DNA of 64,000 nucleotides from Mobula birostris (taxonomy: Eukaryota): contig NC_092394.1 in assembly GCF_030028105.1 (NCBI RefSeq), positions 43,254,477-43,318,476 of the forward strand, written 5' to 3'. Under the pieces are notes generated by a model. That model was given only the letters and a program-made list of their open reading frames with translations. It made no database searches and was not told the DNA's origin. This document shows, one piece after another, positions 2,050-57,594 of the stretch (the first letter of the stretch is position 1; each line of letters begins with the position of its first letter). A program made the translations under genes and the position numbers.

Positions 2050-4790
2050 TTACCCATAGCCCTCTATTTTTCTAAGCTCCATGTAGCCATCCAGGAGTCT
2101 CTTAAAAGACCCTATCGTTTCTGCCTCCACCACTGCTACCGGCAGCTCATTCCACACACTCACCATCTCTGCATAAAAAAACTTACCCCTGACATCTCCT
2201 CTGTACCTACTTCCAAGCACATTAAATCCATGCCCTCTCATGTTATCCATTTCAGCCCTGGGCAAAAGCCAATCCATACGATCAATGCCTCTCATTATCT
2301 TGTACACTTCTATCAGGTCACTCCTCCTCCGTCGTTCCAAGGAGAAAAGGCCGAGTTCACTCAACCTATTTTCATAAGGCATGCTCTCCAATCCAGGCGA
2401 CATCCTTGTAAATCTCATCTGCACCCTTTCTATGGTTTCCACGTCCTTCCTGTAGTGAGGCGACCAGAATTGATCACAGTAATCCAAGTGGGGTCTGACC
2501 AGGGTCCTATATAGCTGCAACGTTACCTCTCGGCTTTTAAGTTCAATCCCACGATTGATGAAGGCCAATGTACCATATGCCTTCTTAACCACAGTGTCAA
2601 CCTGCATAGCAGCTTTGAGTGTCCTATGGACTCGAATCCCAAGATCCCTTTGATCCTCCACACTGCCATGAGTCTTACCATTAATGCTGCACTCTGCCAT
2701 CATTTTTGACCTACCATAATGAACCACATCGTATTTATCTGGGTTGAACTCCATCTGCCACTTCTCAGCCCAGTTTTGCATCCTATCAATGTCCCGCTGT
2801 AACCTCTGACAGCCCTCCACACTATCCACAACACCCCCAACCTTTGTGTCATCAGTCAATTTACTTCCCATCCCTCCACTTCCTCATCCAGGTCATTTAT
2901 AAAAATCACAAAGAGTAGGGGTCCCCAGAAAAGATCCCTGAGGCACACCACTGGTCACCGACCTCCATGCAGAATATGACCCGTCTACAACCACTCTTTG
3001 CCTTCTGTATGCAAGCCAATTCTGGATCCACAAAGCTAGGTCCCCTTGGATCCCATGCCTCTTTACTTTCTCAATAAGCCTTGCATGGGGTACCTTATCA
3101 AATGCCTTGCTGAAAATCCATATACACTACACCTACGGCTCTACCTTCATCAATGTGTTTAGTCACATCCTCAAAAAATTCAATCAGGCTTGTAAGGCAT
3201 GACTACTCCTAATCATATTATGCCTCTCCAAATATTCATAAATCCTGCCTCTTTTTCATCAACTTACCAACCACTGAAGTAAGACTCACTGGTCTATAAT
3301 TTCCTGGGCTATCTCTACTCCATTTCTTGAATAAGGGAACAAATCCACACCCTCTAATTCTCCGGAACCTCTCCTGTCCTCATTGATGATGCAAAGATCA
3401 TCGCCAGAGGCTCAGCAATCTCCTCCTTTGCTTCCCACAGTAGCCTGGGGTAATCCCATCCGTCCTGATGACTTATCCAACTTGATGCTTTCCAAAAGCT
3501 CCAGCACATCCTCTTTCTTAATATCTACATGCTCAAGCTTTTCAGTCCATTGTAAGTCATCCCTACAATCACCAAGATCTTTTTCCATAGTGAATACTGA
3601 AGCAAAGTATTCATTAAGTACCTCTGTTATCTCCTCCAGTTCCATACACACTTTTCCACTGTAACACGTGATTGGTCCTATTCTCTCACGCCTTATCCTC
3701 TTGCTCTTCATATACTTGTAGAATGCCTTGGGGTTTTCCTTCATCCTGTCTGCCAAGGCCTTCTCATGGCCCCTTCTGGCTCTCCTAATTTCATTCTTAA
3801 GCTCCTTCCTGCTAGCATTATAATCTTCTAGATCTCTATCATTACCCATTTTTTGAACATTTCATAAGCTCTTCTTTTCTTCTTGACTAGATATACAACA
3901 GCCTTTGTACACCTCAGTTCCTGTACCTACCATCCTTACCCTGTCTCACTGGAACATACCTATGCAGAACCCCACTCAAATATCCCCTGAACATTTGCCA
4001 CATTTCTTCCGTACGTTTCCCTGAGAAGATCTGTTTCCAATTTATGCTTCCAAGTTCCTCCCTGATAGCCTTATATTTCCCCCTACTCCAATTAAATGTT
4101 TCCCTAACTTGTCTGTTCCTATCCCTCTCCAATGCTATAGGAAATAAGATAGAATTGTGATCACTATCTCCAAAATGCTCTCCCTCTGAGAGACCTGACA
4201 CCTGACCAGGTTCATTTCCAAATACCAGATCAAGTACAGCCTCTCCTCTTGTAGCTTATCTACATATTGTGTCAAGAAGCCTTCCTGAACACACCTAACA
4301 AACTCCACCCCATCTAAACCCCTCGCTCTAGGGAGATGCCAATCAATATTTGGGAAATTAAAATCTACCACCACAACAACCCTGTTATTATTACACCTTT
4401 CCAGAATCTGTCTCCCTATCTGCTCCTCGATGTCCCAGTTACTATTGGGTGGTCCATAAAAAAACACGCAGTAGAGTTATTGACCCCTTCCTATTCCTAA
4501 CTTTCACCCACAGAGACTCCGTGGACAACCCCTCTATGACTGTCTCCTTTTCTGCAGTCATGATACTATCCCTGATCAACAGTGCCACGCCCCACCTCTT
4601 TTGCCTCCCTCCCTGTCCTTTCTGAAACATCTAAAGCCTGGCACTCTAAGCAGCCATTCCTGCCCCTGCACCATCCAAGTCTCTGTAATGACTACAATAT
4701 CATAGCTCCAAGTACTGATCCATGCTCTAAACTCATCCACTTTGTTCATAATGCTCCTCATAGTAAAATAGGTATATCTCAAACCATCAG
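2050..4790 (-). pseudogene. CR1 ORF2 (AP endonuclease and reverse transcriptase), frameshifted
   Basis: ITETW, DFNFPNIDW, SDHN, KENPKAFYKY, TDDTKVGG (FADD variant), WQMEFNPDK, LYRTLVRPHL. Confidence 0.93.
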
Positions 4791-26625: not shown

Positions 26626-27259
26626 TAGGACTTGGGAGGAATGGTATCATCCGTGTCAGATACTTAGGGAGTGCTGTCAAGCAAGTGGCAGATCAAAGAT
26701 GACCTGCACATCTGCCAGATCAGGAGATCCAGAAAAGGTTAATTGACTCTTTTATTTGACGAAACATGATGCATACTAGAAGTACTCTACAGATTACAGC
26801 ATCCCAGGCACGTCTAACTCTCATTCTGCACAAGACCCACAACATTTAGAACATCACGAACAGGGCTATTCATAATCACCTTGAATATATACCAGAAAAG
26901 GTCCAGCTTCAATAAGCATTATTGATTACTGACCACTCCTGCATTGCATAGGTGGATACATGTGAGATCAGACTCGCTTGGAATGTTTGCCACAATCCAA
27001 TAGCCTATCGAAACTGGCTAGACTTGCACATGCAGATCAGCCACTTAGTGGAACATGGGAAGAGAGTGGCTAACAGCACAGTATCTTGGAGGTCAGAAAA
27101 CTGATTGTGAAAAAGCTGCAACATCGGGCTACCTGCTTAATGATTTGTTTGATGTGGTAATGCTGCCCTCTGCTGGATTTCTACGGGATTTGTCAGGACT
27201 ATTATACACACAGCATTCATTCCTCGCTACACACATCAAAGTTGCTGGTGAATGAGGTA

Positions 27260-27297
27260 CAGTCGATGTTTCAGGCCGAGACCCTTCGTCAGGACTA
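27260..27297 (-). ncRNA. PLE hammerhead, variant (GAAAC-ATC)
   Basis: CTGACGA and GAAA intact; cleavage triplet is ATC. Confidence 0.6.
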
Positions 27298-28242
27298 ACT
27301 GAAGGAAGAGTGAGTAAGGGATTTGAAAGTTGGAGGGGGAGGGGGAGATCCAAAATGATAGGAGAAGACAGGAGAGGGAGGGATGGAGCCAAGAGCTGGA
27401 CAGGTGATTAGCAAAGGGGATATGAGAGGATCATGGGACAGGAGGCCTAGGGAGAAAGACAAGGGGGGGGGACCCAGAGGATGGGCAAGAGGTATATTCA
27501 GAGGGACAGAGGGAGAAAAAGGAGAGTGAGAGAAAGAATGTGTGTATAAAAATAAATTACGACTGGGGTATGAGGGGGAGGTGGGGCATTAGCGGAAGTT
27601 AGAGAAGTCAATGTTCATGCCATCAGGTTGGAGGCTACCCAGACGGAATATAAGGTGTTGTTCCTCCAACCTGAGTGTGGCTTCATCTTTACAGTAGAGG
27701 AGGCCGTGGATAGACATATCAGAATGGGAATGGGATGTGGAATTAAAATGTGTGGCCACTGGGAGATCCTGCTTTCTCTGGCGGACAGAGCGTAGATGTT
27801 CAGCAAAACAATCTCCCAGTCTGCGTCAGGTCTCGCCAATATATAAAAGGCCACATCGGGAGCACCCTCCGTACTTATTCCTGGCATACAGTATTCTATC
27901 TGCTGTATCCTGGGGTAGGTGGAGGATCTCCTTGGCCGCTGTCCTGATGGCATGAACATTGACTTCTCTAACTTCCGCTAATGCCCCACCTCCCCCTCCT
28001 ACCCCGTCCGTTATTTGTTTATATACATACATTCTTTCTCTCTCTCCTTTTTCTCCCTCTGTCCCTTCCCTCCCCCCTTGTCTTTCTCCCTGGGCCTCCT
28101 GTCCCATGATCCTCTCGTATCCCTTTTGCCAATCACCTGTCCAGCTCTTGGCTCCATCCCTCCCCCTCCTGTCTTCTCCTATCATTTTGGATCTCCCCCT
28201 TCCTCTCCCACTTTCAAATCTCTTACTAACTCTTCCTTCAGT

Positions 28243-28280
28243 TAGTCCTGACGAAGGGTCTCGGCCTGAAATGTTGACTG
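28243..28280 (+). ncRNA. PLE hammerhead, variant (GAAAT-GTT)
   Basis: CTGACGA core intact; CpG-type changes around stem III. Confidence 0.55.
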
Positions 28281-28559
28281 TACCTCTTCCTAGAGATGCT
28301 GCCTGGCCTACTGCGTTCACCAGCAACTTTGATGTGTGTTGCTCGAATTTCCAGCATCTACAGAATTCCTGTTGTATTCATTCCTCGCTGTTCAATATTA
28401 TTTTTTCGTCTTGATTATACACAGCTATTGAGAGGAATGATTTAATTTTAAGCAAAATTTATTTTATATTCATCCATTGGGTACATTTTGGGCATTCCAT
28501 ACTGAGTGCGGTTGTGTGCCCAGTAGTTCTGGATTTTGTCCACTTTTCATTGCACTTAA

Positions 28560-36796: not shown

Positions 36797-38939
36797 CACA
36801 AAATGCTGGAGCAACTCAGCAGTTTCAGGCAGCATCCATGGATGAGACCCTTCATCGGGGCTAGAAAGGAAGCAGGCAGCAGCCAGAATAAAGAGGGAGG
36901 AGGGAAGGGAAAGGAGTACAGTTTGGCTGGTGAGAGGTGAGACCAGCTGGGGAGGAAGGTGCGTGGGGGAAGAGAAAGTAAGAAACTGGGAGGTGACAGG
37001 TGGAAGGGATAAAGGCTGACAAACAGGTGAGGAGCAAAGAAGGGTTGAATTAGGAATGGAAGAAGAGAGAAAGGGGGAAGATGGAGTAATTACCAGAAGT
37101 TAGAGAAGTTGGTTTTCACGCCATGAGGTTGGAGGCTACCCAAATGGAATGAAGTGTTGCTCCTCCAGCGTGAGAGTGGCTTCATCATAGCAGTAGAGGA
37201 GTCCATGGCCACACAAATGATGATGGGAATGGGAAGTCCAACTAAAATGAATGGCCAATAGGAGATCCTGCATTTTGTGTTGGACAGGGGTACTTATCTC
37301 TGTAACTGTGTTCGCCCTGTCCCTTTACCTCCTTCCTCACCACCATTCAGGACCCCAAACAGTCCTTTCAGGTGAGACAACAACACTCCAGTTGTGAGTT
37401 TGTCGGAACTATCGACTTTAGCCGGTTCCTCCGGTGCGGCCTCCTCCTCATTGGTGAGACGCGGTGCAGATTGGGAGGCCACTTTGTTAAGCACTTTCCC
37501 ACTGTCTGCCGCAAAAGGCTGAATGTCCTGGTAGCCTCTTACTTCGATTCAACTTTCCACTCCCATGTCCATGGCCTCCTCTACTGCCACGTTGAGGCTG
37601 AACTCAGGTTGAAGTAGTAATGCCTCATATTCTGTCTGAGTTGCCTCCAACTTAATGGTGTGAACATCAATTTCTCCAACTGATGCTAATTTTTCCCCCC
37701 GAATTTTTGTCCTGCCCCGCCCCCCCCAACTTTGTTCCTTTTCGATTCCCCGTTCTGGTTACCTTCTTACACCTTCTCTTCTCCTCATCTACCCATCACT
37801 TCCGTCTGCTGCCCTCCCTACTTCCCTTTGTTCCATGGTCCATTGCCCTCCCCAATTAGATTCCTCCTTCCTCAGTCTGTTACCTCCGCCACCTACTGTA
37901 TAACCTCCCAGTTTCTTAATTCCCACTACCCCACCTACCTGACTTTTCCTCTCACCTATTGTGTCTTTGTCACTTGGTGTGAGCAGAATTATCTGCAGCT
38001 TAATGTGAAAAAGACTAAGGAGCTGGAGATAGACCTGAGGAGAGCTAAGGTACCGGTGACCCCTGTTTTCATCCAGGGGGGTCAGTGTGGACATGGTGGA
38101 GGATTACAAATACCTGGGGATATGTATTGACAATAAACTGGACTGGTCAAAGAATACTGAAGCTGTCTACAAGAAGGGTCAGAGCCACCTCTATTTCCTG
38201 AGGAGACTGAGGTCCTTTAACATCTGCCGGACGATGCTGAGGATGTTCTACGAGTCTGTGGTGGCCAGTGCTATCATGTTTGCTGTTGTATGCTGGGGCA
38301 GCAGGCTGAGGGTAGCAGACACCAACAGAATCAACAAACTTATTCGTAAGGCCAGTGATGTTGTGGGGATGGAACTGGACTCTCTCATGGTGGTGTCTGA
38401 AAAGAGGATGCTGTCTAAGTTGCATGCCATCTTGGTCAATGTCTCCCATCCACTACATAATGTACTGGTTGGGCACAGGAGTACATCCAGCCAGAGACTC
38501 ATTCCACTGAGATGCAACACAGAGCGTCATAGGAAGTCATTCCTGCCTGTGGCCATCAAACTTTACAACTCCTCCCTTGGAGGGTCAGACACCCTGTGCC
38601 GATAGGCTGGTCCTGGACTTATTTCATAATTTACTGGCATAATTTACATATTACTATTTAACTACTTATGGTTCTATTACTATTTATTATTTATGGTGCA
38701 ACTGTAACGAAAACCAATTTCCCCCTGGGATCAATAAAGTATGACTATGACTATGACTATCACCTCCCAGTTTGAACTCATTCCCCTGCCCACCTTCCTT
38801 TTCAGTCCCGATGAAGGGCCTCAGCTCAAAACATCCAGTGTTCATTCCCTTCTATGGATGCTGCCTGACCTGCTGAGTTCCTCCACCATTTCATGCATGT
38901 TGCTCAACACTGCCAGCATCTGCAGATTCTCCTGTGTTT
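36797..38939. mobile_element. Penelope-like insertion with inverted arms (minus 36797-37290; plus 37291-38939 including decayed GIY-YIG), interrupted by Rex1
   Basis: RCGLLLIGETRCRLGGHF peptide; degenerate TSD agtcatgaactccca / agtcatgacctctccca. Confidence 0.85.
37962..38760 (+). mobile_element. Rex1/Babar LINE 3' fragment, young
   Basis: WCEQNYLQLNVKKTKEL; YKYLGICIDNKLDW..LYFLRRLRSF..SFLPVAIKLYN; (ATGACT)n tail. Confidence 0.92.
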
Positions 38940-39114
38940 AGTCATGACCTCTCCCATAAAGCAATGAGAGGGAATGCAAAACAAGTCTTGAATAAACTAT
39001 TTGGAAAAGCTCTCGGTGTAAATAGCCTTGGAATACTTGCCTTCACCCTTTTGCAGTTGATAATGATTATCCTGCTAAAGGCCTTGGGTAGAATGAGAAA
39101 GGAATTGCACACAC

Positions 39115-48834: not shown

Positions 48835-49076
48835 AGCAACACACACAAAATGCTGGAGGAACTCAGCAGGCCAGGCAGCATCTATGGAAAACAGTACAGT
48901 CGACATTTCAATCCGATACCCTTCAGCAGGGTCGATCCCATTTATAGATGTGTTTCTCGGCCTGAAATGCCAACTGTACTCTTTTCCATAAATGCTACCT
49001 GGCCTGCTGAGTTCCTCCAGCATTCTGTGTGTGTTGCTTGGATTTCCAGCATCTGCAGATTTTCTCTTGTTTGTGA
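48835..49076. mobile_element. Miniature palindromic Penelope insertion (two inverted 3' ends)
   Basis: both strands give MLEELSRPGSIYGK pseudo-ORFs; degenerate TSD aggtaacattca / aggtaacgatca. Confidence 0.85.
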
Positions 49077-50575: not shown

Positions 50576-51197
50576 TAGTTTTAAATTCTTCAGCCAAAGG
50601 AACCAGTCAAGTGTAAGGTTGATGCTGTTAAGTTTTAGGTGGTCAGATAAAGCAAATGGCAGAATACTGGAAAGTGCACAAATGAACACATGCACCAACA
50701 GCTAGAGCTGTAATTGAGGCAGAAATCCTCACGACTTTTAAATACTATCTGCCGAAGCGCATTAAGAGATCTGGATATCCTAGTTTAGTACAAGAGATTC
50801 TTTCTTTTAATTGCCAGGCTACAGAATACAAGAGAAAAGGAGGTCATTATAAAACAGCGTGAAGCAGCAATCAGACTACTGCTGGAATACTCTAAATAAT
50901 TGCACATTAGATAGGCTGACAGTGCTACAGAATGTACAGAGAGGATTTACAGGAACAGTAGCACAGCGGGAGGATTCAAGCAATGAGAAACTTTTCACTG
51001 GGCTACATTTGGTTGCCCGAGAACAGAGGAGTCCCGAGTGAAATTTACAGGAGATATACAGAAGGCACAATAACACAGTGGTGAGAGTAACACTTTACAG
51101 TACCAGCAACTTGGGTTCAATTCCAGCCGCTACCCATTAGGCATTTCAAAGTTGCTGGTGAACGCAGCAGGCCAGGCAGCATCTCTAGGAAGAGGTA

Positions 51198-51235
51198 CAG
51201 TCGACGTTTCGGGCCGAGATCCTTCGTCAGGACTA
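51198..51235 (-). ncRNA. Minimal hammerhead ribozyme (PLE), sense in the HIP1 pre-mRNA
   Basis: minus strand agtc-CTGACGA-aggatctcggccc-GAAAC-GTC-gact. Confidence 0.75.
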
Positions 51236-51564
51236 ACTGAAGGAAGAGTTAGTAAGAGATTTGAAAGTGGGAGGGGGAGGCGGAGATCTGAAATGATAGG
51301 AGAAGACAGGAGGGGGAGGGATGGAGCCAAGAGCTGGACAGGTGATTGGCAAAGGGGATATGAGAGGATCATGGGACAGGAGGTCCAGGGAGAAAGACAA
51401 GGGGGGGAACCCAGAGGCTGGGCAAGGGGTATAGTCAGCGGGACAGAGGGAGAAAAAGGAGAGAGAGAGAAAGAATGTGTGTATAAGGATAAATAACGGA
51501 TGGGGTACGAGGGGGAGGTGGGGCATTAGCGGAAGTTAGAGAAGTCAATGTTCATGCCATCAGG

Positions 51565-52539
51565 ACAGCGGCCAAGGAGATCCTCCACCTACCCCAGGAT
51601 ACAGCAGATGGAATACTGTATGCCAGGAATAAGTACGGAGGATTAAGCCTACCAAAGTTGGAAGTGCTGATTCCGATAGCTGTGATGAGGAAAAGGCCGG
51701 CATTGGAGCTCTCGGAGGACAGAGTTATCAAAGTGTCGTTCACCATGGCCAACAAGGACAACCAGGCAAAATCAAGAGTCTGGCTAGTCTCGAGGTGCTG
51801 AAGGAAGTCATGGGGGAGCAGGACTCTGACATCCAATCATACATGGTGGACAGACCGAGAGCACCTGGTAGAGGTTACGACGTCTTTGGGGAGATGATGG
51901 AGGATGAGGTGAGTGGACCACCCAAATTCGAGTTAGACTGGCGGACGACCGAATTCGAAAAGTGGGCCCAGCTAACTATACAGGGATCCGGAATCAGAGA
52001 CTTCAGGAATAATGAGCCATCTAATTGGTGGCTGAAAAACCACGAAGGCTGGAAGGGCTACCAGATAGCGGATGCTTTGCTGCTAAGATGTGGACAGTAT
52101 CCAACACGGTGTACAAGGAATAAAGGGGACAAAGATCGAGTGAAAACCTGTAGGAGATGTAGTGTGGCCAATGAGACCCTGGCCCATATCTCCGGGAGAT
52201 GCGCGGAGGTGAAAAGGAGCCGGATTAAGAGGCATAACAAGGTGGCTGAAAGACAAAGCCTGTAAGCTTGGATGGGATGCGTACGTCGAACCTCATATAA
52301 GAACAGAGGACGGATCACTATGGAAGCCGAACCTGATCTTTGTTAAGAGAGGGAAAGCAGCTGTAGTCGACGTGACCATCAGATATGAGGACAGCCATCT
52401 GTCCCTTGAAAAGGCGTGGAAGGAGAAGGAGGAAAAGTATAAACATCTCACACGCCAGATAAAAGAGCTTACAGGTGCAGAGACAGTAGCTTACTTTGGA
52501 TTCGTGGTGGGAGCAAGAGGTCTCTGGCTGAAAGAAAAC
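51565..52539 (+). pseudogene. R2 non-LTR retrotransposon fragment (RT thumb, CCHC knuckle, restriction-like endonuclease), 2 frameshifts
   Basis: IRTAAKEILHLPQDTADGILYARNKYGGL; DWRTTEFEKWAQLTIQGSGI; CRRCSVANETLAHISGRC (C-X2-C-X8-H-X4-C), RIKRHNKV; EPHI..KPNLIFVK..VVDVTIRYE..KEEKY..GFVVGARGLW. The PD motif reads PN. Confidence 0.92.
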
Positions 52540-52861
52540 GATGGCATGAACATTGACTTCTCTAACTTCCGCTAATGCCCCACCTCCCCCTCGTACCCCA
52601 TCCGTTATTTATTTTTATACACATATTCTTTCTATCACTCTCCTTATTCTCCCTCTGTCTATACCCCTTGCCCATCCTCTGGGTTCCCTCCCTCCCTTGT
52701 CTTTCTCCCTGGGCCTCCTGTCCCATGATCCTCTCGTATCCCCTTTGCCAATCACCTGTCCAGCTCTTGGCTCCATCCCTCCCCCTCCTGTCTTCTCCTA
52801 TCATTTTGGATCTCCCCCTTCCCCTCCCACTTTCAAATCACTTACTAACTCTTCCTTCAGT

Positions 52862-52899
52862 TAGTCCTGACGAAGGGTCTCGGCCTGAAACGTCGACTG
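52862..52899 (+). ncRNA. Minimal type I hammerhead ribozyme of the Penelope 3' end
   Basis: agtc-CTGACGA-agggtctcggcct-GAAAC-GTC-gact; stem I agtc/gact; predicted cleavage after 52894. Confidence 0.8.
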
Positions 52900-53635
52900 T
52901 ACCTCCTCCTAGAGATGCTGCCTGACCTGCTGCGTTCACCAGCAACTTTAATGTGTGTTGCTTGAATTTCCAGCATCTGCAGAATTCCTGTTGTTCCCGT
53001 AAGGCATTTGTACATTCTCTGCATGGGTTTCCTCCAGGTGCTCTGGTTTCCTCCCTCACTCCAAAGATGCAGGTTAATTGGTCATTGTAAATTGTCCTAG
53101 GATTAGGCGAGAATTAAATCGGGGATTGCTGGGCAGATGCAGCTCGGAGGGCTGGAAGGGGCTATTCCGCGTTGTATCTCAATCAATCAAGAAAATTATG
53201 TGTGTCTGCTAGTTTCCCTTAGAGAAATGTCAACAGAGGCAAAAATTTCCAAAAGCTGGTAAGCTTATTCAAAAACTGGGGAATTTTGGTTTAATCTAAA
53301 GTGCAACAGATGCTTCTTCCGTTCTTTTATAGATGGTTGGAACTCACTGCCTGTAAGGACAATTGAAGCAGAAATTCATTTTAAAAGTTATCTGGGGAAG
53401 CATGTTCAGGGAGCTGGGTGTCCAAGTGCATATGACAAAAGACCAATAGGCAGGCAGAGCAGATAATTATTAAATCCAAAGGAAAGTTATTATTTATAGG
53501 TAGGGAATTATAATGTACCATGCATGCAGCACTCTGTATAGGACAAGTCGCTTAGTTAACTAAGATGGTAATGCACCAGAAGCAGTTCACAGAAGATTTA
53601 TTAGATTAAAACCTAGAGCTGGCAGGTTGCCATAC

Positions 53636-56448: not shown

Positions 56449-56585
56449 CGCAAACATGAGGAAATCTGCAGATGCTGGAATTTCAAGCAACACACATAAA
56501 AGTTGCTGGTGAACGCAGCAGGCCAGGCAGCATCTCTAGGAGAGGTACAGTCGACGTTTCGGGCCAAGTCCCTTCATCAGGACAA
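56449..56585 (-). mobile_element. Short PLE 3'-end insertion (hammerhead plus tail)
   Basis: 10-bp TSD aaatcaataa (56439-48 / 56586-95). Confidence 0.85.
56548..56583 (-). ncRNA. Minimal hammerhead ribozyme (PLE), sense in the HIP1 pre-mRNA
   Basis: minus strand gtc-CTGATGA-agggacttggccc-GAAAC-GTC-gac. Confidence 0.75.
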
Positions 56586-57594
56586 AAATCAATAAATCCA
56601 TTTCGTTCTTTTAAGAAATTATCACTGATTTTTTCTGAAGAAAGAGCAGCAAATATACAAGATCTACTTGCATAACAGTCCAAACCAAAGGTCCAAACCA
56701 ATTGTTCTGTACCAATTTACAGGAAGGTGGAGGGTTTTCTGTTCCCTTCTTTCCTATTACGGAAGAATTCCAAGAGAGGTGCAGAGACAGCACGGAGGAA
56801 ATACAGAATGGGGGAGGGGAGAGGAAGCTGAGTGGTGCAAGAGAAGGCAGCTAGGGGACAGACACACCAGAGGAGGGGAAATTAAAGAGATGGAGGAACA
56901 GAATGTGAAGTGCAGTCATGATGCTGTTCATGCAGTGCAGAGGTATGCAAGTGTGAAGACCATCAGACATAGAAGCAGAATTAGGCCATTCAGTCCATCG
57001 AGTCCCGTTTGCTATTCCACCATGGCTGATTTATTACCCTTCTCAAGACCCTATTCTCTTGCCTACTTCCCGTAACTTTTGACACCATGACTAATCAAGA
57101 ACCTATCAAGCTCTGCATTAAATATACCCAAGGACTTGGCCTCCACAGCCCTCTGTGGCAATAAATTCCACAGATTCACTATCTGCTAGCTAGAAATTCC
57201 TCATCTCTGTTCCTCTATTCTGAGGCTGTGCCATCTGGTCCGAGACTCCCCTACGATAGGAAACATCCTCTCCTCATCCACTCCAACATGTCCTTTTGAT
57301 ATTCAATGGGTTTCAATGAGATTCCTCTTCATTCTTCTAATCTTCAGTGAGTACAGGCCTGGAGCCAAATGCTCCTGTGTTAACCCTTTCGTTCCCTGAA
57401 TCATACCCAAAAATTTCCTCTGGTCCCTCTCCAATGCCAGCAATACTCCAAATAAGGTCTGATCAATGACTTATACAGCCTCATCATTACATCCTGATTC
57501 TATATCCTAGTCTTCTTGAAATGAATGCCAACAATACAATTGCCTTCCTTACCAGTAACTCAACCTGCAAGTCAATCTTCAAGGAATCCTACAA

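What the first reader, a model, noticed from the sequence alone, without database searches (positions are those of the whole stretch)
51146..52995. Penelope-R2 chimeric element: R2 endonuclease-region cargo between outward-facing ribozyme-bearing Penelope arms
Seen: ~420-bp inverted PLE 3' ends, each with a hammerhead, enclose 975 bp of R2 (thumb, C-X2-C-X8-H-X4-C knuckle, PD-(D/E)xK-type nuclease with PD->PN), bounded by a 14-bp TSD inside a V-SINE in a HIP1 intron. Established: R2 normally targets 28S rDNA, and PLEs carry minimal hammerheads and form inverted ends. No rDNA flank and no R2 3'UTR is present, so R2 did not insert here by itself. Inference: a non-autonomous composite retroelement uniting two unrelated classes, in which a transcript of either strand ends in a PLE tail. 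I do not know of a description of it; this is the best candidate for a new system in the window.
Basis: partly seen in the sequence, partly recalled or inferred. Interest (0 to 1): 0.9.

Follow-up and report, generated by a model that had tools for sequence, protein, structure and literature searches.

The report
Penelope insertion carrying an R2 fragment
A Penelope-like retrotransposon insertion with two inverted ends picked up a dead piece of an R2 retrotransposon and was copied at least once more, which is a natural example of Penelope elements moving foreign sequence rather than a new kind of mobile element.

Summary
At 51147-52995, two inverted Penelope-like (PLE) 3' ends of 415 and 456 bp enclose 978 bp of vertebrate-type R2 coding sequence. 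That sequence runs from the thumb through the CCHC motif to the restriction-like nuclease and is decayed. A 14-bp target duplication (12 of 14 matching) bounds the whole unit. Each arm holds the last PLE codons, a 3' UTR and a minimal hammerhead motif. The hammerheads are supported by motif only, because Rfam finds nothing.

A second insertion at 27229-28375 has a perfect 14-bp duplication and carries the same R2/PLE junction with 80 nt of the same R2 sequence. Its other arm runs into the PLE GIY-YIG coding region. So the chimera, or its parent, was transcribed and reverse-transcribed again.

Inverted arms, a 30-40-bp tail at one end, cutting and priming on both target strands, and unrelated sequence framed by PLE repeats with duplications are all published (Craig 2021; Frangieh 2024; Arkhipova 2013). 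R2 is passive cargo. I found no paper describing a PLE-R2 chimera.

Reads (contigs only) neither confirm nor refute the junctions. Family size, and whether the whole unit replicates, remain untested. This scan's earlier notes report similar chimeras elsewhere in the genome; I did not check them.

The parts
51133..51146 (.). Left copy of the 14-bp target-site duplication (CCCATTAGGCATTT)
   Evidence: It matches 12 of 14 positions of 52996-53009.
51147..51561 (-). Left arm: inverted PLE 3' end (last 12 codons of the PLE ORF, 3' UTR and hammerhead motif). It lacks the terminal ~45-nt tail.
   Evidence: Inverted repeat. Alignment A1. blastn to the right arm, arm positions 1-410.
51203..51230 (-). 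Minimal hammerhead motif of the left arm: CTGACGA-A-GGATCTCGGCCC-GAAACGTC. The predicted cut follows GTC.
   Evidence: Pattern match with 0 mismatches. Features compared with PMC4209133 passages. No Rfam hit.
51559..51564 (.). Left junction: ATCAGG is shared by R2 (sense) and by the antisense PLE ORF end, a 6-nt microhomology.
   Evidence: R2 homology starts at 51559 in 6 of 6 tblastn queries and in R2 contigs (records 3 and 13). Genuine PLE copies read GCCATCAGGTTGGAGG (loose end at 51564).
51562..52539 (+). R2 cargo, equal to residues ~750-1071 of a 1121-residue vertebrate R2 protein (thumb, CCHC, restriction-like nuclease), read in three frame pieces.
51767..51768 (+). First frame break: a 1-nt deletion relative to R2 contigs of the same and a related species.
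   Evidence: table 4: an A, or in one X5 contig a T, is put in behind 51767 in X5 and X16 contigs. Frames.
52149..52202 (+). C-X2-C-X8-H-X4-C motif (CRRC...H...C).
52246..52247 (+). Second frame break: an 8-nt deletion relative to R2 contigs.
   Evidence: table 4: TGAAAGAT is put in behind 52246 in X1, X5 and X16.
52324..52332 (+). KPN in place of the nuclease motif KPD. The genome's multi-copy R2 contigs have G at 52330, which gives Asp.
   Evidence: alignment. table 3, row 52330..
52540..52995 (+). Right arm: complete PLE 3' end. The ORF end DGMNIDFSNFR plus stop is 52540-52575; the tail is ~52951-52995.
52867..52894 (+). Minimal hammerhead motif of the right arm. The 10.1-11.1 pair is G-U here.
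   Evidence: No Rfam hit.
52996..53009 (.). Right copy of the target-site duplication (CCCGTAAGGCATTT).
27215..27228 (.). Second insertion: left copy of a perfect 14-bp duplication (ATTCATTCCTCGCT).
   Evidence: (D3).
27229..27865 (-). Second insertion: inverted genuine PLE 3' end. It runs on into the GIY-YIG coding region (CSRCGLLYIGET...EH...) and lacks the last ~36 nt of tail.
27866..27945 (-). Second insertion: 80 nt of the same R2 sequence (cargo positions 1-80), joined to the right arm at the same point as in the first insertion.
   Evidence: blastn 98.75%. 1 difference in 80. Alignment A1. tblastn.
27946..28375 (+). Second insertion: right arm with tail. Its hammerhead core is mutated (GAAATGTTGAC).
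28376..28389 (.). Second insertion: right copy of the 14-bp duplication.

Best explanation
This is a chimeric insertion made and moved by the Penelope-like element (PLE) machinery. R2 is inert cargo.

**Shown.**
- One insertion event placed the whole 1849-bp unit, because a single 14-bp duplication flanks it.
- The two outer parts are PLE 3' ends pointing outward.
- The middle is an internal piece of the genome's own R2.
- The same R2/PLE junction was used again in a second insertion. The other arm of that insertion came from an ordinary PLE RNA.

**Inferred mechanism.**
1. The PLE protein nicks both target strands 14 bp apart and primes reverse transcription on each nick. One nick starts at the distal start site, so that arm carries the tail. 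The other starts at the proximal site, so that arm has no tail.
2. Both cDNAs ran to about the same point, 36 nt before the PLE stop codon. I take that point to be a discrete RNA 5' end or a strong stop, most likely the 5' border of the terminal repeat (pLTR).
3. The right-hand cDNA then switched template onto R2 mRNA and copied ~1 kb.
4. The left-hand cDNA end annealed to it through the shared ATCAGG, closing the insertion.
5. Later, an antisense or read-through transcript of such a unit served as template for one arm of the insertion at 27229-28375.
For: **A single unit with PLE-type ends.**
- Inverted repeat, duplications and alignment.
- The arms are PLE. The 36 nt at their inner end are the last 11 codons plus the stop of an ORF. 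In the second insertion that ORF continues as C-x2-C-GLLYIGET...EH, that is, two cysteines directly before YIG, as PMC8557442 describes for PLE nucleases.
- The arm sequence is extremely abundant in reads of two species.

**The cargo is R2.**
-.
- A 4416-nt contig in a run guessed to be RNA covers 51559-52527 at its positions 2863-3840, so the cargo is an internal R2 piece.

**The junction was re-used.**
- The 80 nt shared by the two insertions differ at 1 position.

**The inverted form is usual here.**
- Four inverted PLE insertions lie in this one window.

**Published support.**
- Both target strands are cleaved and extended, and there are two internal start sites that equal the tail (PMC11167929).
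- Inverted arms and a one-sided tail are generic (PMC8557442).
- Foreign sequence framed by pLTRs with duplications is mobilised in trans (PMC3846280).

**Microhomology.**
- ATCAGG at the left junction.
Against: **The junctions are not confirmed in reads.**
- No read or contig shown bridges either R2/PLE junction.
- In the best DNA run (X1), the window's own cargo letters were absent at the listed places 51634-51681 and 51824-51840. Only diverged R2 contigs lay there.
- The tool states that contigs drop rare variants, so this is no proof of absence. It is also no confirmation.

**Inferred steps that were not tested.**
- The discrete PLE RNA end at the arm border is inferred from 3 of 4 arm ends in one window, not measured.
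- Most reads continue from that point into the PLE ORF: 187 X1 records.
- The order of events, two-armed founder or one-armed founder, is not resolved.
- No transcript of the unit was shown.

**Searches that could have found further copies were blank.**
-.
Confidence: 0.6

Rival explanations
1. One-armed master (5' transduction). A 5'-truncated PLE tail once inserted in antisense into an R2 copy. Transcripts starting in R2 antisense and ending in the PLE tail are the mobile template. The second arm is added anew at each insertion, and in the first insertion it happened to end at the same PLE position.
For: Only the left junction (R2 position 1 joined to the arm) is shared by the two insertions. 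The second insertion needs only R2-antisense plus the tail. PLE reverse transcription starts internally and copies whatever lies upstream (PMC11167929).
Against: It needs a separate explanation for why the right arm of the first insertion ends within a few nt of the same PLE position. It also needs antisense R2 transcription. Earlier unchecked notes of this scan speak of R2 fragments with the same two breakpoints elsewhere.
Confidence: 0.2
2. Self-perpetuating two-armed family. The inverted-arm unit is itself the replicating element. Transcripts of both strands end in a PLE tail, and the complementary cDNAs made at the two nicks anneal over the cargo and regenerate the unit.
For: Geometry of the unit. 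Both-strand priming by a PLE protein. Re-use of one junction. Unchecked notes of same-breakpoint R2 fragments elsewhere.
Against: No second full copy was seen in any call. In both arms the PLE sense direction points outward, so any sense-strand promoter they hold would not transcribe the cargo (inference from orientation). The second insertion is a mixed product, not a regenerated unit.
Confidence: 0.12
3. Break-repair capture. A head-to-head pair of PLE arms was inserted first. Its palindromic centre later broke, and an R2 cDNA fragment was ligated in as filler.
For: It explains why both arms end at the same point. Head-to-head arm pairs without cargo exist in the window (48835-49071). Palindromes at inverted PLE junctions are described (PMC3846280).
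Against: The 6-nt microhomology at one junction fits template switching or annealing equally well. Later retro-copying is still needed to explain the second insertion. No empty palindromic version of this locus was seen.
Confidence: 0.05
4. Assembly artefact: repeats were mis-joined across PLE arms.
For: PLE tandem and inverted structures are known to trouble assemblies (PMC8557442). No shown contig bridges the junctions. The window's own cargo letters were not seen in run X1.
Against: Matched 14-bp duplications flank both insertions (12 of 14 and 14 of 14). The same junction stands at two loci 23 kb apart. A related species' run holds cargo pieces with 0 of 128 and 2 of 123 differences from the window (records 21 and 23).
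Confidence: 0.03

Closest known systems
Penelope pLTR-framed foreign sequence in the rotifer Adineta vaga (Arkhipova, Yushenova, Rodriguez 2013, PMC3846280; passages read)
   Same: Unrelated sequence lies between PLE terminal repeats, one of them inverted, bounded by a target duplication, and is mobilised in trans by PLE enzymes. The repeats hold the first ORF codons, and an optional ~31-bp tail sits on one side.
   Different: The NRPS case there has two direct repeats plus one inverted repeat, and the cargo is a host gene with introns. Here there is one inverted and one direct arm only, the cargo is a fragment of another retrotransposon, the host is a vertebrate, and the duplication is 14 bp (8-10 bp there).
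Generic PLE insertion architecture (Craig et al. 2021, PMC8557442, passages; Frangieh et al. 2024, PMC11167929, main text)
   Same: An inverted 5'-truncated copy forms inverted repeats. A 30-40-bp tail sits at one end only. There is a hammerhead in the repeat. Both target strands are cut and extended, with two internal start sites.
   Different: Ordinary copies hold PLE sequence between the arms, or nothing at all, not R2.
LINE-1 chimeric retrocopies and twin priming (recalled: U6/L1 chimeras, Ostertag and Kazazian twin priming; PMC13174262 seen in a search listing only)
   Same: Template switching from the element's RNA to another RNA during target-primed reverse transcription. Two cDNAs are joined through microhomology, giving inversions.
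   Different: A different enzyme class is involved. L1 inversions come from one RNA and have no ribozyme-bearing arms.
R2 retrotransposon (solved vertebrate R2 proteins 9nl2, 9nl3, 9dou)
   Same: The cargo aligns to the thumb, CCHC and restriction-like nuclease region of R2.
   Different: Only ~29% of the protein is present. There is no reverse-transcriptase core, no 3' UTR and no 28S flank. There are two frame breaks and KPD has become KPN.
Animal non-LTR retrozymes (Li, Clavereau, Pollet 2026 preprint, 10.64898/2026.07.22.740005; abstract and section 14 read)
   Same: Non-autonomous sequences derived from PLE terminal repeats that carry type I hammerheads.
   Different: Retrozymes are tandem direct repeats thought to use circular RNA. 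This unit has inverted arms and a foreign insert.

Membership tests
Penelope-like element (EN+ PLE) insertion | [quoted passage not shown] | tested here: inconclusive
   The translation of 27589-27867 (minus strand) reads G-C-S-R-C-G-L-L-Y-I-G-E-T...EH, and its end is the inner 36 nt of every arm. This matches the description quoted. However, Pfam and PDB give no hit for the 78-residue remnant, and the Atlas gives only a weak GIY-YIG lead of 0.87. No PLE reverse-transcriptase sequence was examined.
Penelope-like element (EN+ PLE) insertion | Inverted 5'-truncated copy forming inverted repeats, with a 30-40-bp tail at one end only. | tested here: met
   The tail is ~45 nt in the first insertion and ~36 nt in the second, and is present on the right arm only in both.
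Penelope-like element (EN+ PLE) insertion | [quoted passage not shown] | tested here: met
   The motif read, compared with PMC4209133, shows CUGACGA, an extra A, a GG...CC helix II and GAAA-CG-UC. The left arm has G-C at 10.1-11.1 and the right arm has G-U. This is motif level only: there is no Rfam hit, and cleavage was not tested.
Penelope-like element (EN+ PLE) insertion | Target-site duplication. | tested here: met
   14 bp in 2 of 2 insertions whose ends I read.
R2 (28S-specific non-LTR retrotransposon) | C-terminal CCHC motif plus restriction-like nuclease (PD...D/E-x-K type), homologous to R2 proteins. | tested here: met
   (E down to 1.4e-23 against vertebrate R2 structures). The catalytic D is replaced by N.
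R2 (28S-specific non-LTR retrotransposon) | Reverse-transcriptase core and N-terminal DNA-binding domains in one ORF. | tested here: not met
   The cargo starts at about residue 750 (thumb). tblastn with 6 full R2 proteins finds nothing upstream.
R2 (28S-specific non-LTR retrotransposon) | Insertion in the 28S rRNA gene, with an R2 3' UTR at the junction. | tested here: not met
   No rRNA hit in the window (Rfam gathering). The cargo ends ~50 codons before the R2 stop and abuts PLE sequence.
Non-autonomous PLE-dependent family (multi-copy composite) | Several independent copies sharing both internal junctions, each with its own duplication. | tested here: inconclusive
   Two insertions share one junction. 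No second copy with both junctions was seen. The genome outside the window could not be searched (searches were blank). Unchecked notes report more.

The most novel reading that the evidence does not exclude
In this fish lineage, inverted-arm PLE units may be a replicating form in their own right. Any sequence caught between two outward-facing terminal repeats would be copied from transcripts of either strand. The cDNAs primed at the two nicks would anneal over the cargo to rebuild the unit. PLEs would then act as a general two-ended vector that spreads pieces of other retrotransposons, and possibly host sequence, through vertebrate genomes.
Probability: 0.12. Interest if true: 0.65.

Novelty: new member of a known kind. 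Interest (0 to 1): 0.4.

Why it matters
Very little is known about how PLEs transpose in vivo. These two insertions are natural products that fit the recent in vitro finding that a PLE protein nicks and extends both target strands.

The second insertion has one arm continuing into R2 and the other into the PLE ORF. Its two arms therefore came from two different templates. That argues for two primed cDNAs rather than snap-back self-copying as the source of PLE inverted repeats.

The result also shows that PLEs can scatter fragments of a strictly rDNA-bound element (R2) into genes. This matters for repeat annotation: such fragments would be mis-scored as non-rDNA R2 insertions. It also matters for dating R2 activity.

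It does not reveal a new class of element.

Tried and rejected
**Rfam.** A search of the whole window at gathering score and of 51100-53050 at E<=10 gave no hammerhead. Only three chance-level snoRNA/ssnA rows appeared.

**Monomer RNA folds of five hammerhead regions.** None gave a hammerhead fold, and z-scores ran from -0.49 to +0.93. This is expected for minimal motifs thought to act as dimers, so it is uninformative.

**Pfam.**
- The three R2 pieces gave nothing relevant.
- The GIY-YIG remnant gave nothing.
- PDB gave nothing for the same remnant.

**Protein word searches meant to find further copies.** All were blank:
- the ORF spanning the R2/PLE junction;
- the 156-residue R2 ORF;
- the 116-residue ORF of the arm.

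These blanks say little, because the tool only sees proteins of similar length.

**HMMER over representatives.** It found 358 R2-type hits, none above 46% identity over the 160-residue query piece, so the host's own R2 protein was not retrieved.

**Look-ups in this scan's earlier findings by sequence.** Both were blank.

**Reads.** Only contigs were available, so depth, ends and strand could not be used, and no bridging record was listed.

**Nested independent insertions.** I rejected this reading because one duplication flanks the whole unit and R2 abuts both arms without any intervening host sequence.

**Arm subfamilies.** I first thought the second insertion's left arm belonged to another PLE subfamily (88.8-90.5%). 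A cleaner alignment shows all four arms are 93.2-96.2% alike, so I dropped that idea.

**Unverified host context.** HIP1 and V-SINE were not verified.

**Literature.** Searches for a PLE-R2 chimera and for elasmobranch PLE work found no description. The library lacks most subscription journals, and supplements were closed. The supplementary figures of PMC11167929 and PMC8557442, and Repbase/Dfam entries, could hold related cases.
Full report
**What is in the sequence**

Between 51147 and 52995 lies a 1849-bp unit.
- Its outer parts are an inverted repeat: 261 nt at 95%, 120 nt at 95% and 44 nt at 91%, together about 414 nt.
- The right arm (52540-52995) is 456 nt.
- The left arm (51147-51561, minus strand) stops about 45 nt short of the right arm's outer end.
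- The unit is flanked by CCCATTAGGCATTT and CCCGTAAGGCATTT, 12 of 14 identical.
- The 978 bp in the middle (51562-52539) read as protein in three frame pieces.

**The cargo is R2**

- The three pieces match solved vertebrate R2 proteins (9nl2, 9nl3, 9dou) at E 1.9e-7, 3.2e-21 and 1.4e-23. They are collinear with residues about 750-1071 of the 1121-residue chain. Bombyx R2 matches only weakly, at E 0.032.
- A HMMER scan of 1.84 billion representatives gave 358 hits at E<=0.001, the best at 42-46% identity.
- Of the six hits I looked up, two carry the name R2 (Platysternon, Syngnathus), three are named only as reverse transcriptase, reverse-transcriptase-domain protein or ribonuclease H (Beryx splendens, Denticeps clupeoides, and a Cyprinus carpio member of P0015's cluster), and one (P0011) carries no name.
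- All six hit 51559-52542 by tblastn.
- The CCHC motif (52149-52202) and the nuclease motifs are present. KPN stands where R2 has KPD.

**The cargo came from the genome's own R2**

Laying contigs of four runs gave the following.
- The genome holds a multi-copy R2 that differs from the cargo by about 7-9%. Contig depths were 1319-1737, against about 52 for the unique flank in run X1.
- A 4416-nt contig in a run guessed to be RNA covers 51559-52527 at its positions 2863-3840. The cargo is therefore an internal piece of R2, with neither the reverse-transcriptase core nor the 3' end.
- Those contigs carry one extra base after 51767, eight extra bases after 52246, and G at 52330.
- So the cargo's two frame breaks are a 1-nt and an 8-nt deletion, and the Asn is a changed Asp. 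The cargo is dead.

**The arms are Penelope-like 3' ends**

- The inner 36 nt of each arm read DGMNIDFSNFR-stop.
- In a second insertion (below), the same reading frame continues upstream as GCSRCGLLYIGET(stop)RRLGDCFAEHLRSV.... That gives two cysteines directly before YIG followed by R...EH. This is how PLE GIY-YIG nucleases are described (PMC8557442, passage).
- Pfam, PDB and the Atlas did not confirm this remnant independently. The call rests on motifs and architecture.
- Each arm holds CTGACGA-A-GG(G/A)TCTCGGCC(T/C)-GAAACGTC. The pattern occurs 4 times in the window against 0.01 expected.
- It shows the traits listed for PLE minimal hammerheads (PMC4209133): an extra base after position 9, G10.1-C11.1 (G-U in the right arm) and a palindromic CG at 15.2-16.2.
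- Rfam models do not detect it, and monomer folding is uninformative.
- The arm sequence is enormously abundant in reads of two species.

**A second insertion shares the junction**

- blastn of arm and cargo against the window found 27229-28375, flanked by a perfect 14-bp duplication, ATTCATTCCTCGCT.
- Its right arm (27946-28375, with tail) is preceded by 80 nt (27866-27945) that are the reverse complement of cargo positions 1-80. They differ at 1 position in 80 and are joined to the arm at the same point as in the first insertion (alignment A1).
- Its left arm (27229-27865, no tail) runs straight on into 241 nt of PLE coding sequence.
- So one arm was copied from an RNA carrying the R2/PLE junction, and the other from an ordinary PLE RNA.
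- The junction was inherited, not made twice. The chimera or its parent was transcribed and reverse-transcribed again.
- All four arms are 93.2-96.2% alike. Arms of one insertion are no closer than arms of different insertions, so both insertions date from one period of activity.

**How this compares with what is published**

- Craig et al. 2021 (passages) describe PLE insertions as often having an inverted 5'-truncated copy that forms inverted repeats, and a 30-40-bp tail at only one end.
- Frangieh et al. 2024 (main text) show that a purified PLE protein cleaves and extends both target strands. They also show that reverse transcription starts at two internal sites whose spacing is the tail.
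- Arkhipova et al. 2013 (passages) describe host genes and other unrelated sequences framed by PLE terminal repeats with target duplications. They conclude that the repeats suffice for mobilisation in trans.
- The window itself holds four inverted PLE insertions: 27229-28375, about 36800-38940, 48835-49071 and 51147-52995.
- Everything about the frame of this unit is therefore ordinary PLE behaviour. What is particular is the cargo and the junctions.

**The junctions**

- R2 homology starts at 51559, not 51562.
- Genuine PLE copies read ...GCCATCAGGTTGG... at that place (187 loose ends).
- ATCAGG (51559-51564) is therefore common to both partners, a 6-nt microhomology.
- At the right junction, R2 runs to ...AAAAC, the Asn codon aligned with the conserved N of R2 proteins, and PLE starts at GATGGC.
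- Both arms thus end within a few bases of the same PLE position, 36 nt before the stop. So does the right arm of the second insertion.
- Two independent truncations would rarely coincide like this. I infer a discrete end of the template there, most simply the 5' border of the terminal repeat or a transcription start. This is not shown.

**Most likely mechanism (inference apart from the points marked as shown above)**

1. The protein makes nicks 14 bp apart on both strands.
2. Each nick primes a cDNA on a PLE RNA.
3. Both cDNAs run off at the arm border.
4. One jumps onto R2 mRNA and copies about 1 kb.
5. The other anneals to it through ATCAGG.
6. Repair completes the unit.
7. A later transcript that crossed the left junction in antisense templated one arm of the second insertion.

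Rivals are a one-armed master with R2 antisense upstream of a PLE tail, a truly self-perpetuating two-armed family, filler capture at a broken arm palindrome, and mis-assembly.

**Arguments against mis-assembly, and their limit**

- Duplications are matched at both insertions.
- The same junction stands at two loci 23 kb apart.
- A related species' run holds cargo pieces with 0 of 128 and 2 of 123 differences.
- The limit is that no listed contig bridges a junction, and run X1 did not show the window's own cargo letters at several places. Contigs drop rare variants, so this settles nothing either way.

**What I could not do**

I could not search the rest of the genome. The protein searches aimed at further copies were blank. 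Earlier notes of this scan, unchecked by me, report R2 fragments with PLE at other places in this genome, and 14-bp duplications as the rule for this PLE family.

**Verdict**

- The reading as a composite that PLE machinery has moved is supported.
- The claim of a new system is not supported.
- This is a new member of the known kind 'foreign sequence framed and moved by Penelope terminal repeats'. Its value is as in vivo evidence for two-strand, two-template priming.
- I found no paper describing a PLE-R2 chimera, within the limits of that library.

Noticed in passing
window 48835-49071: A short head-to-head PLE insertion of a more diverged family (about 79-81% to the arm), with arms of ~96 and ~117 nt. 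Their inner ends lie at arm positions 327 and 339, just at the hammerhead core. Again only the right arm carries the terminal tail.
   Followed up: partly
window ~36800-38940: An older inverted PLE structure. PLE C-terminal coding lies on the minus strand at 37096-37285 and on the plus strand at 37468-37680. The right arm is apparently interrupted by another LINE-like ORF (38087-38605).
   Followed up: partly
window 56453-56586: A solo 5'-truncated PLE tail (minus strand, 91% to the arm). It starts ~6 nt upstream of an intact hammerhead motif (56553-56580). With 48835-49071, this hints that PLE truncation points cluster at the hammerhead.
   Followed up: no
window 27229-28375, 36800-38940, 48835-49071, 51147-52995: In the inverted insertions I measured, the two arms are of similar length: 96 and 117 nt at 48835-49071, and 637 against 536 nt (arm plus R2) at 27229-28375. 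The decayed insertion at 36800-38940 also looks roughly symmetric by eye, but I did not compute its arm lengths. This near-symmetry is not expected from independent random truncation and may reflect coupled synthesis at the two nicks.
   Followed up: no
window 51559-52527 (reads): A 4416-nt contig in a run guessed to be RNA (X16, depth 164) covers the cargo collinearly at ~9% divergence. Multi-copy R2 contigs in DNA run X1 stand at about 25-33 times unique depth. This suggests a full-length, possibly expressed R2 in this species.
   Followed up: no
window 2920-3114: Weak similarity (E 7.6e-4) of one R2-type protein's reverse-transcriptase region on the minus strand. It is probably another reverse-transcriptase-bearing repeat and not R2.
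   Followed up: no
window 52911-52995: The arm contains an ATG ~20 nt after the predicted hammerhead cut. In the less decayed copy (28294-28375) an open frame runs from it to the element's end. This is consistent with the PLE ORF starting inside the terminal repeat, as described for other PLEs.
   Followed up: no
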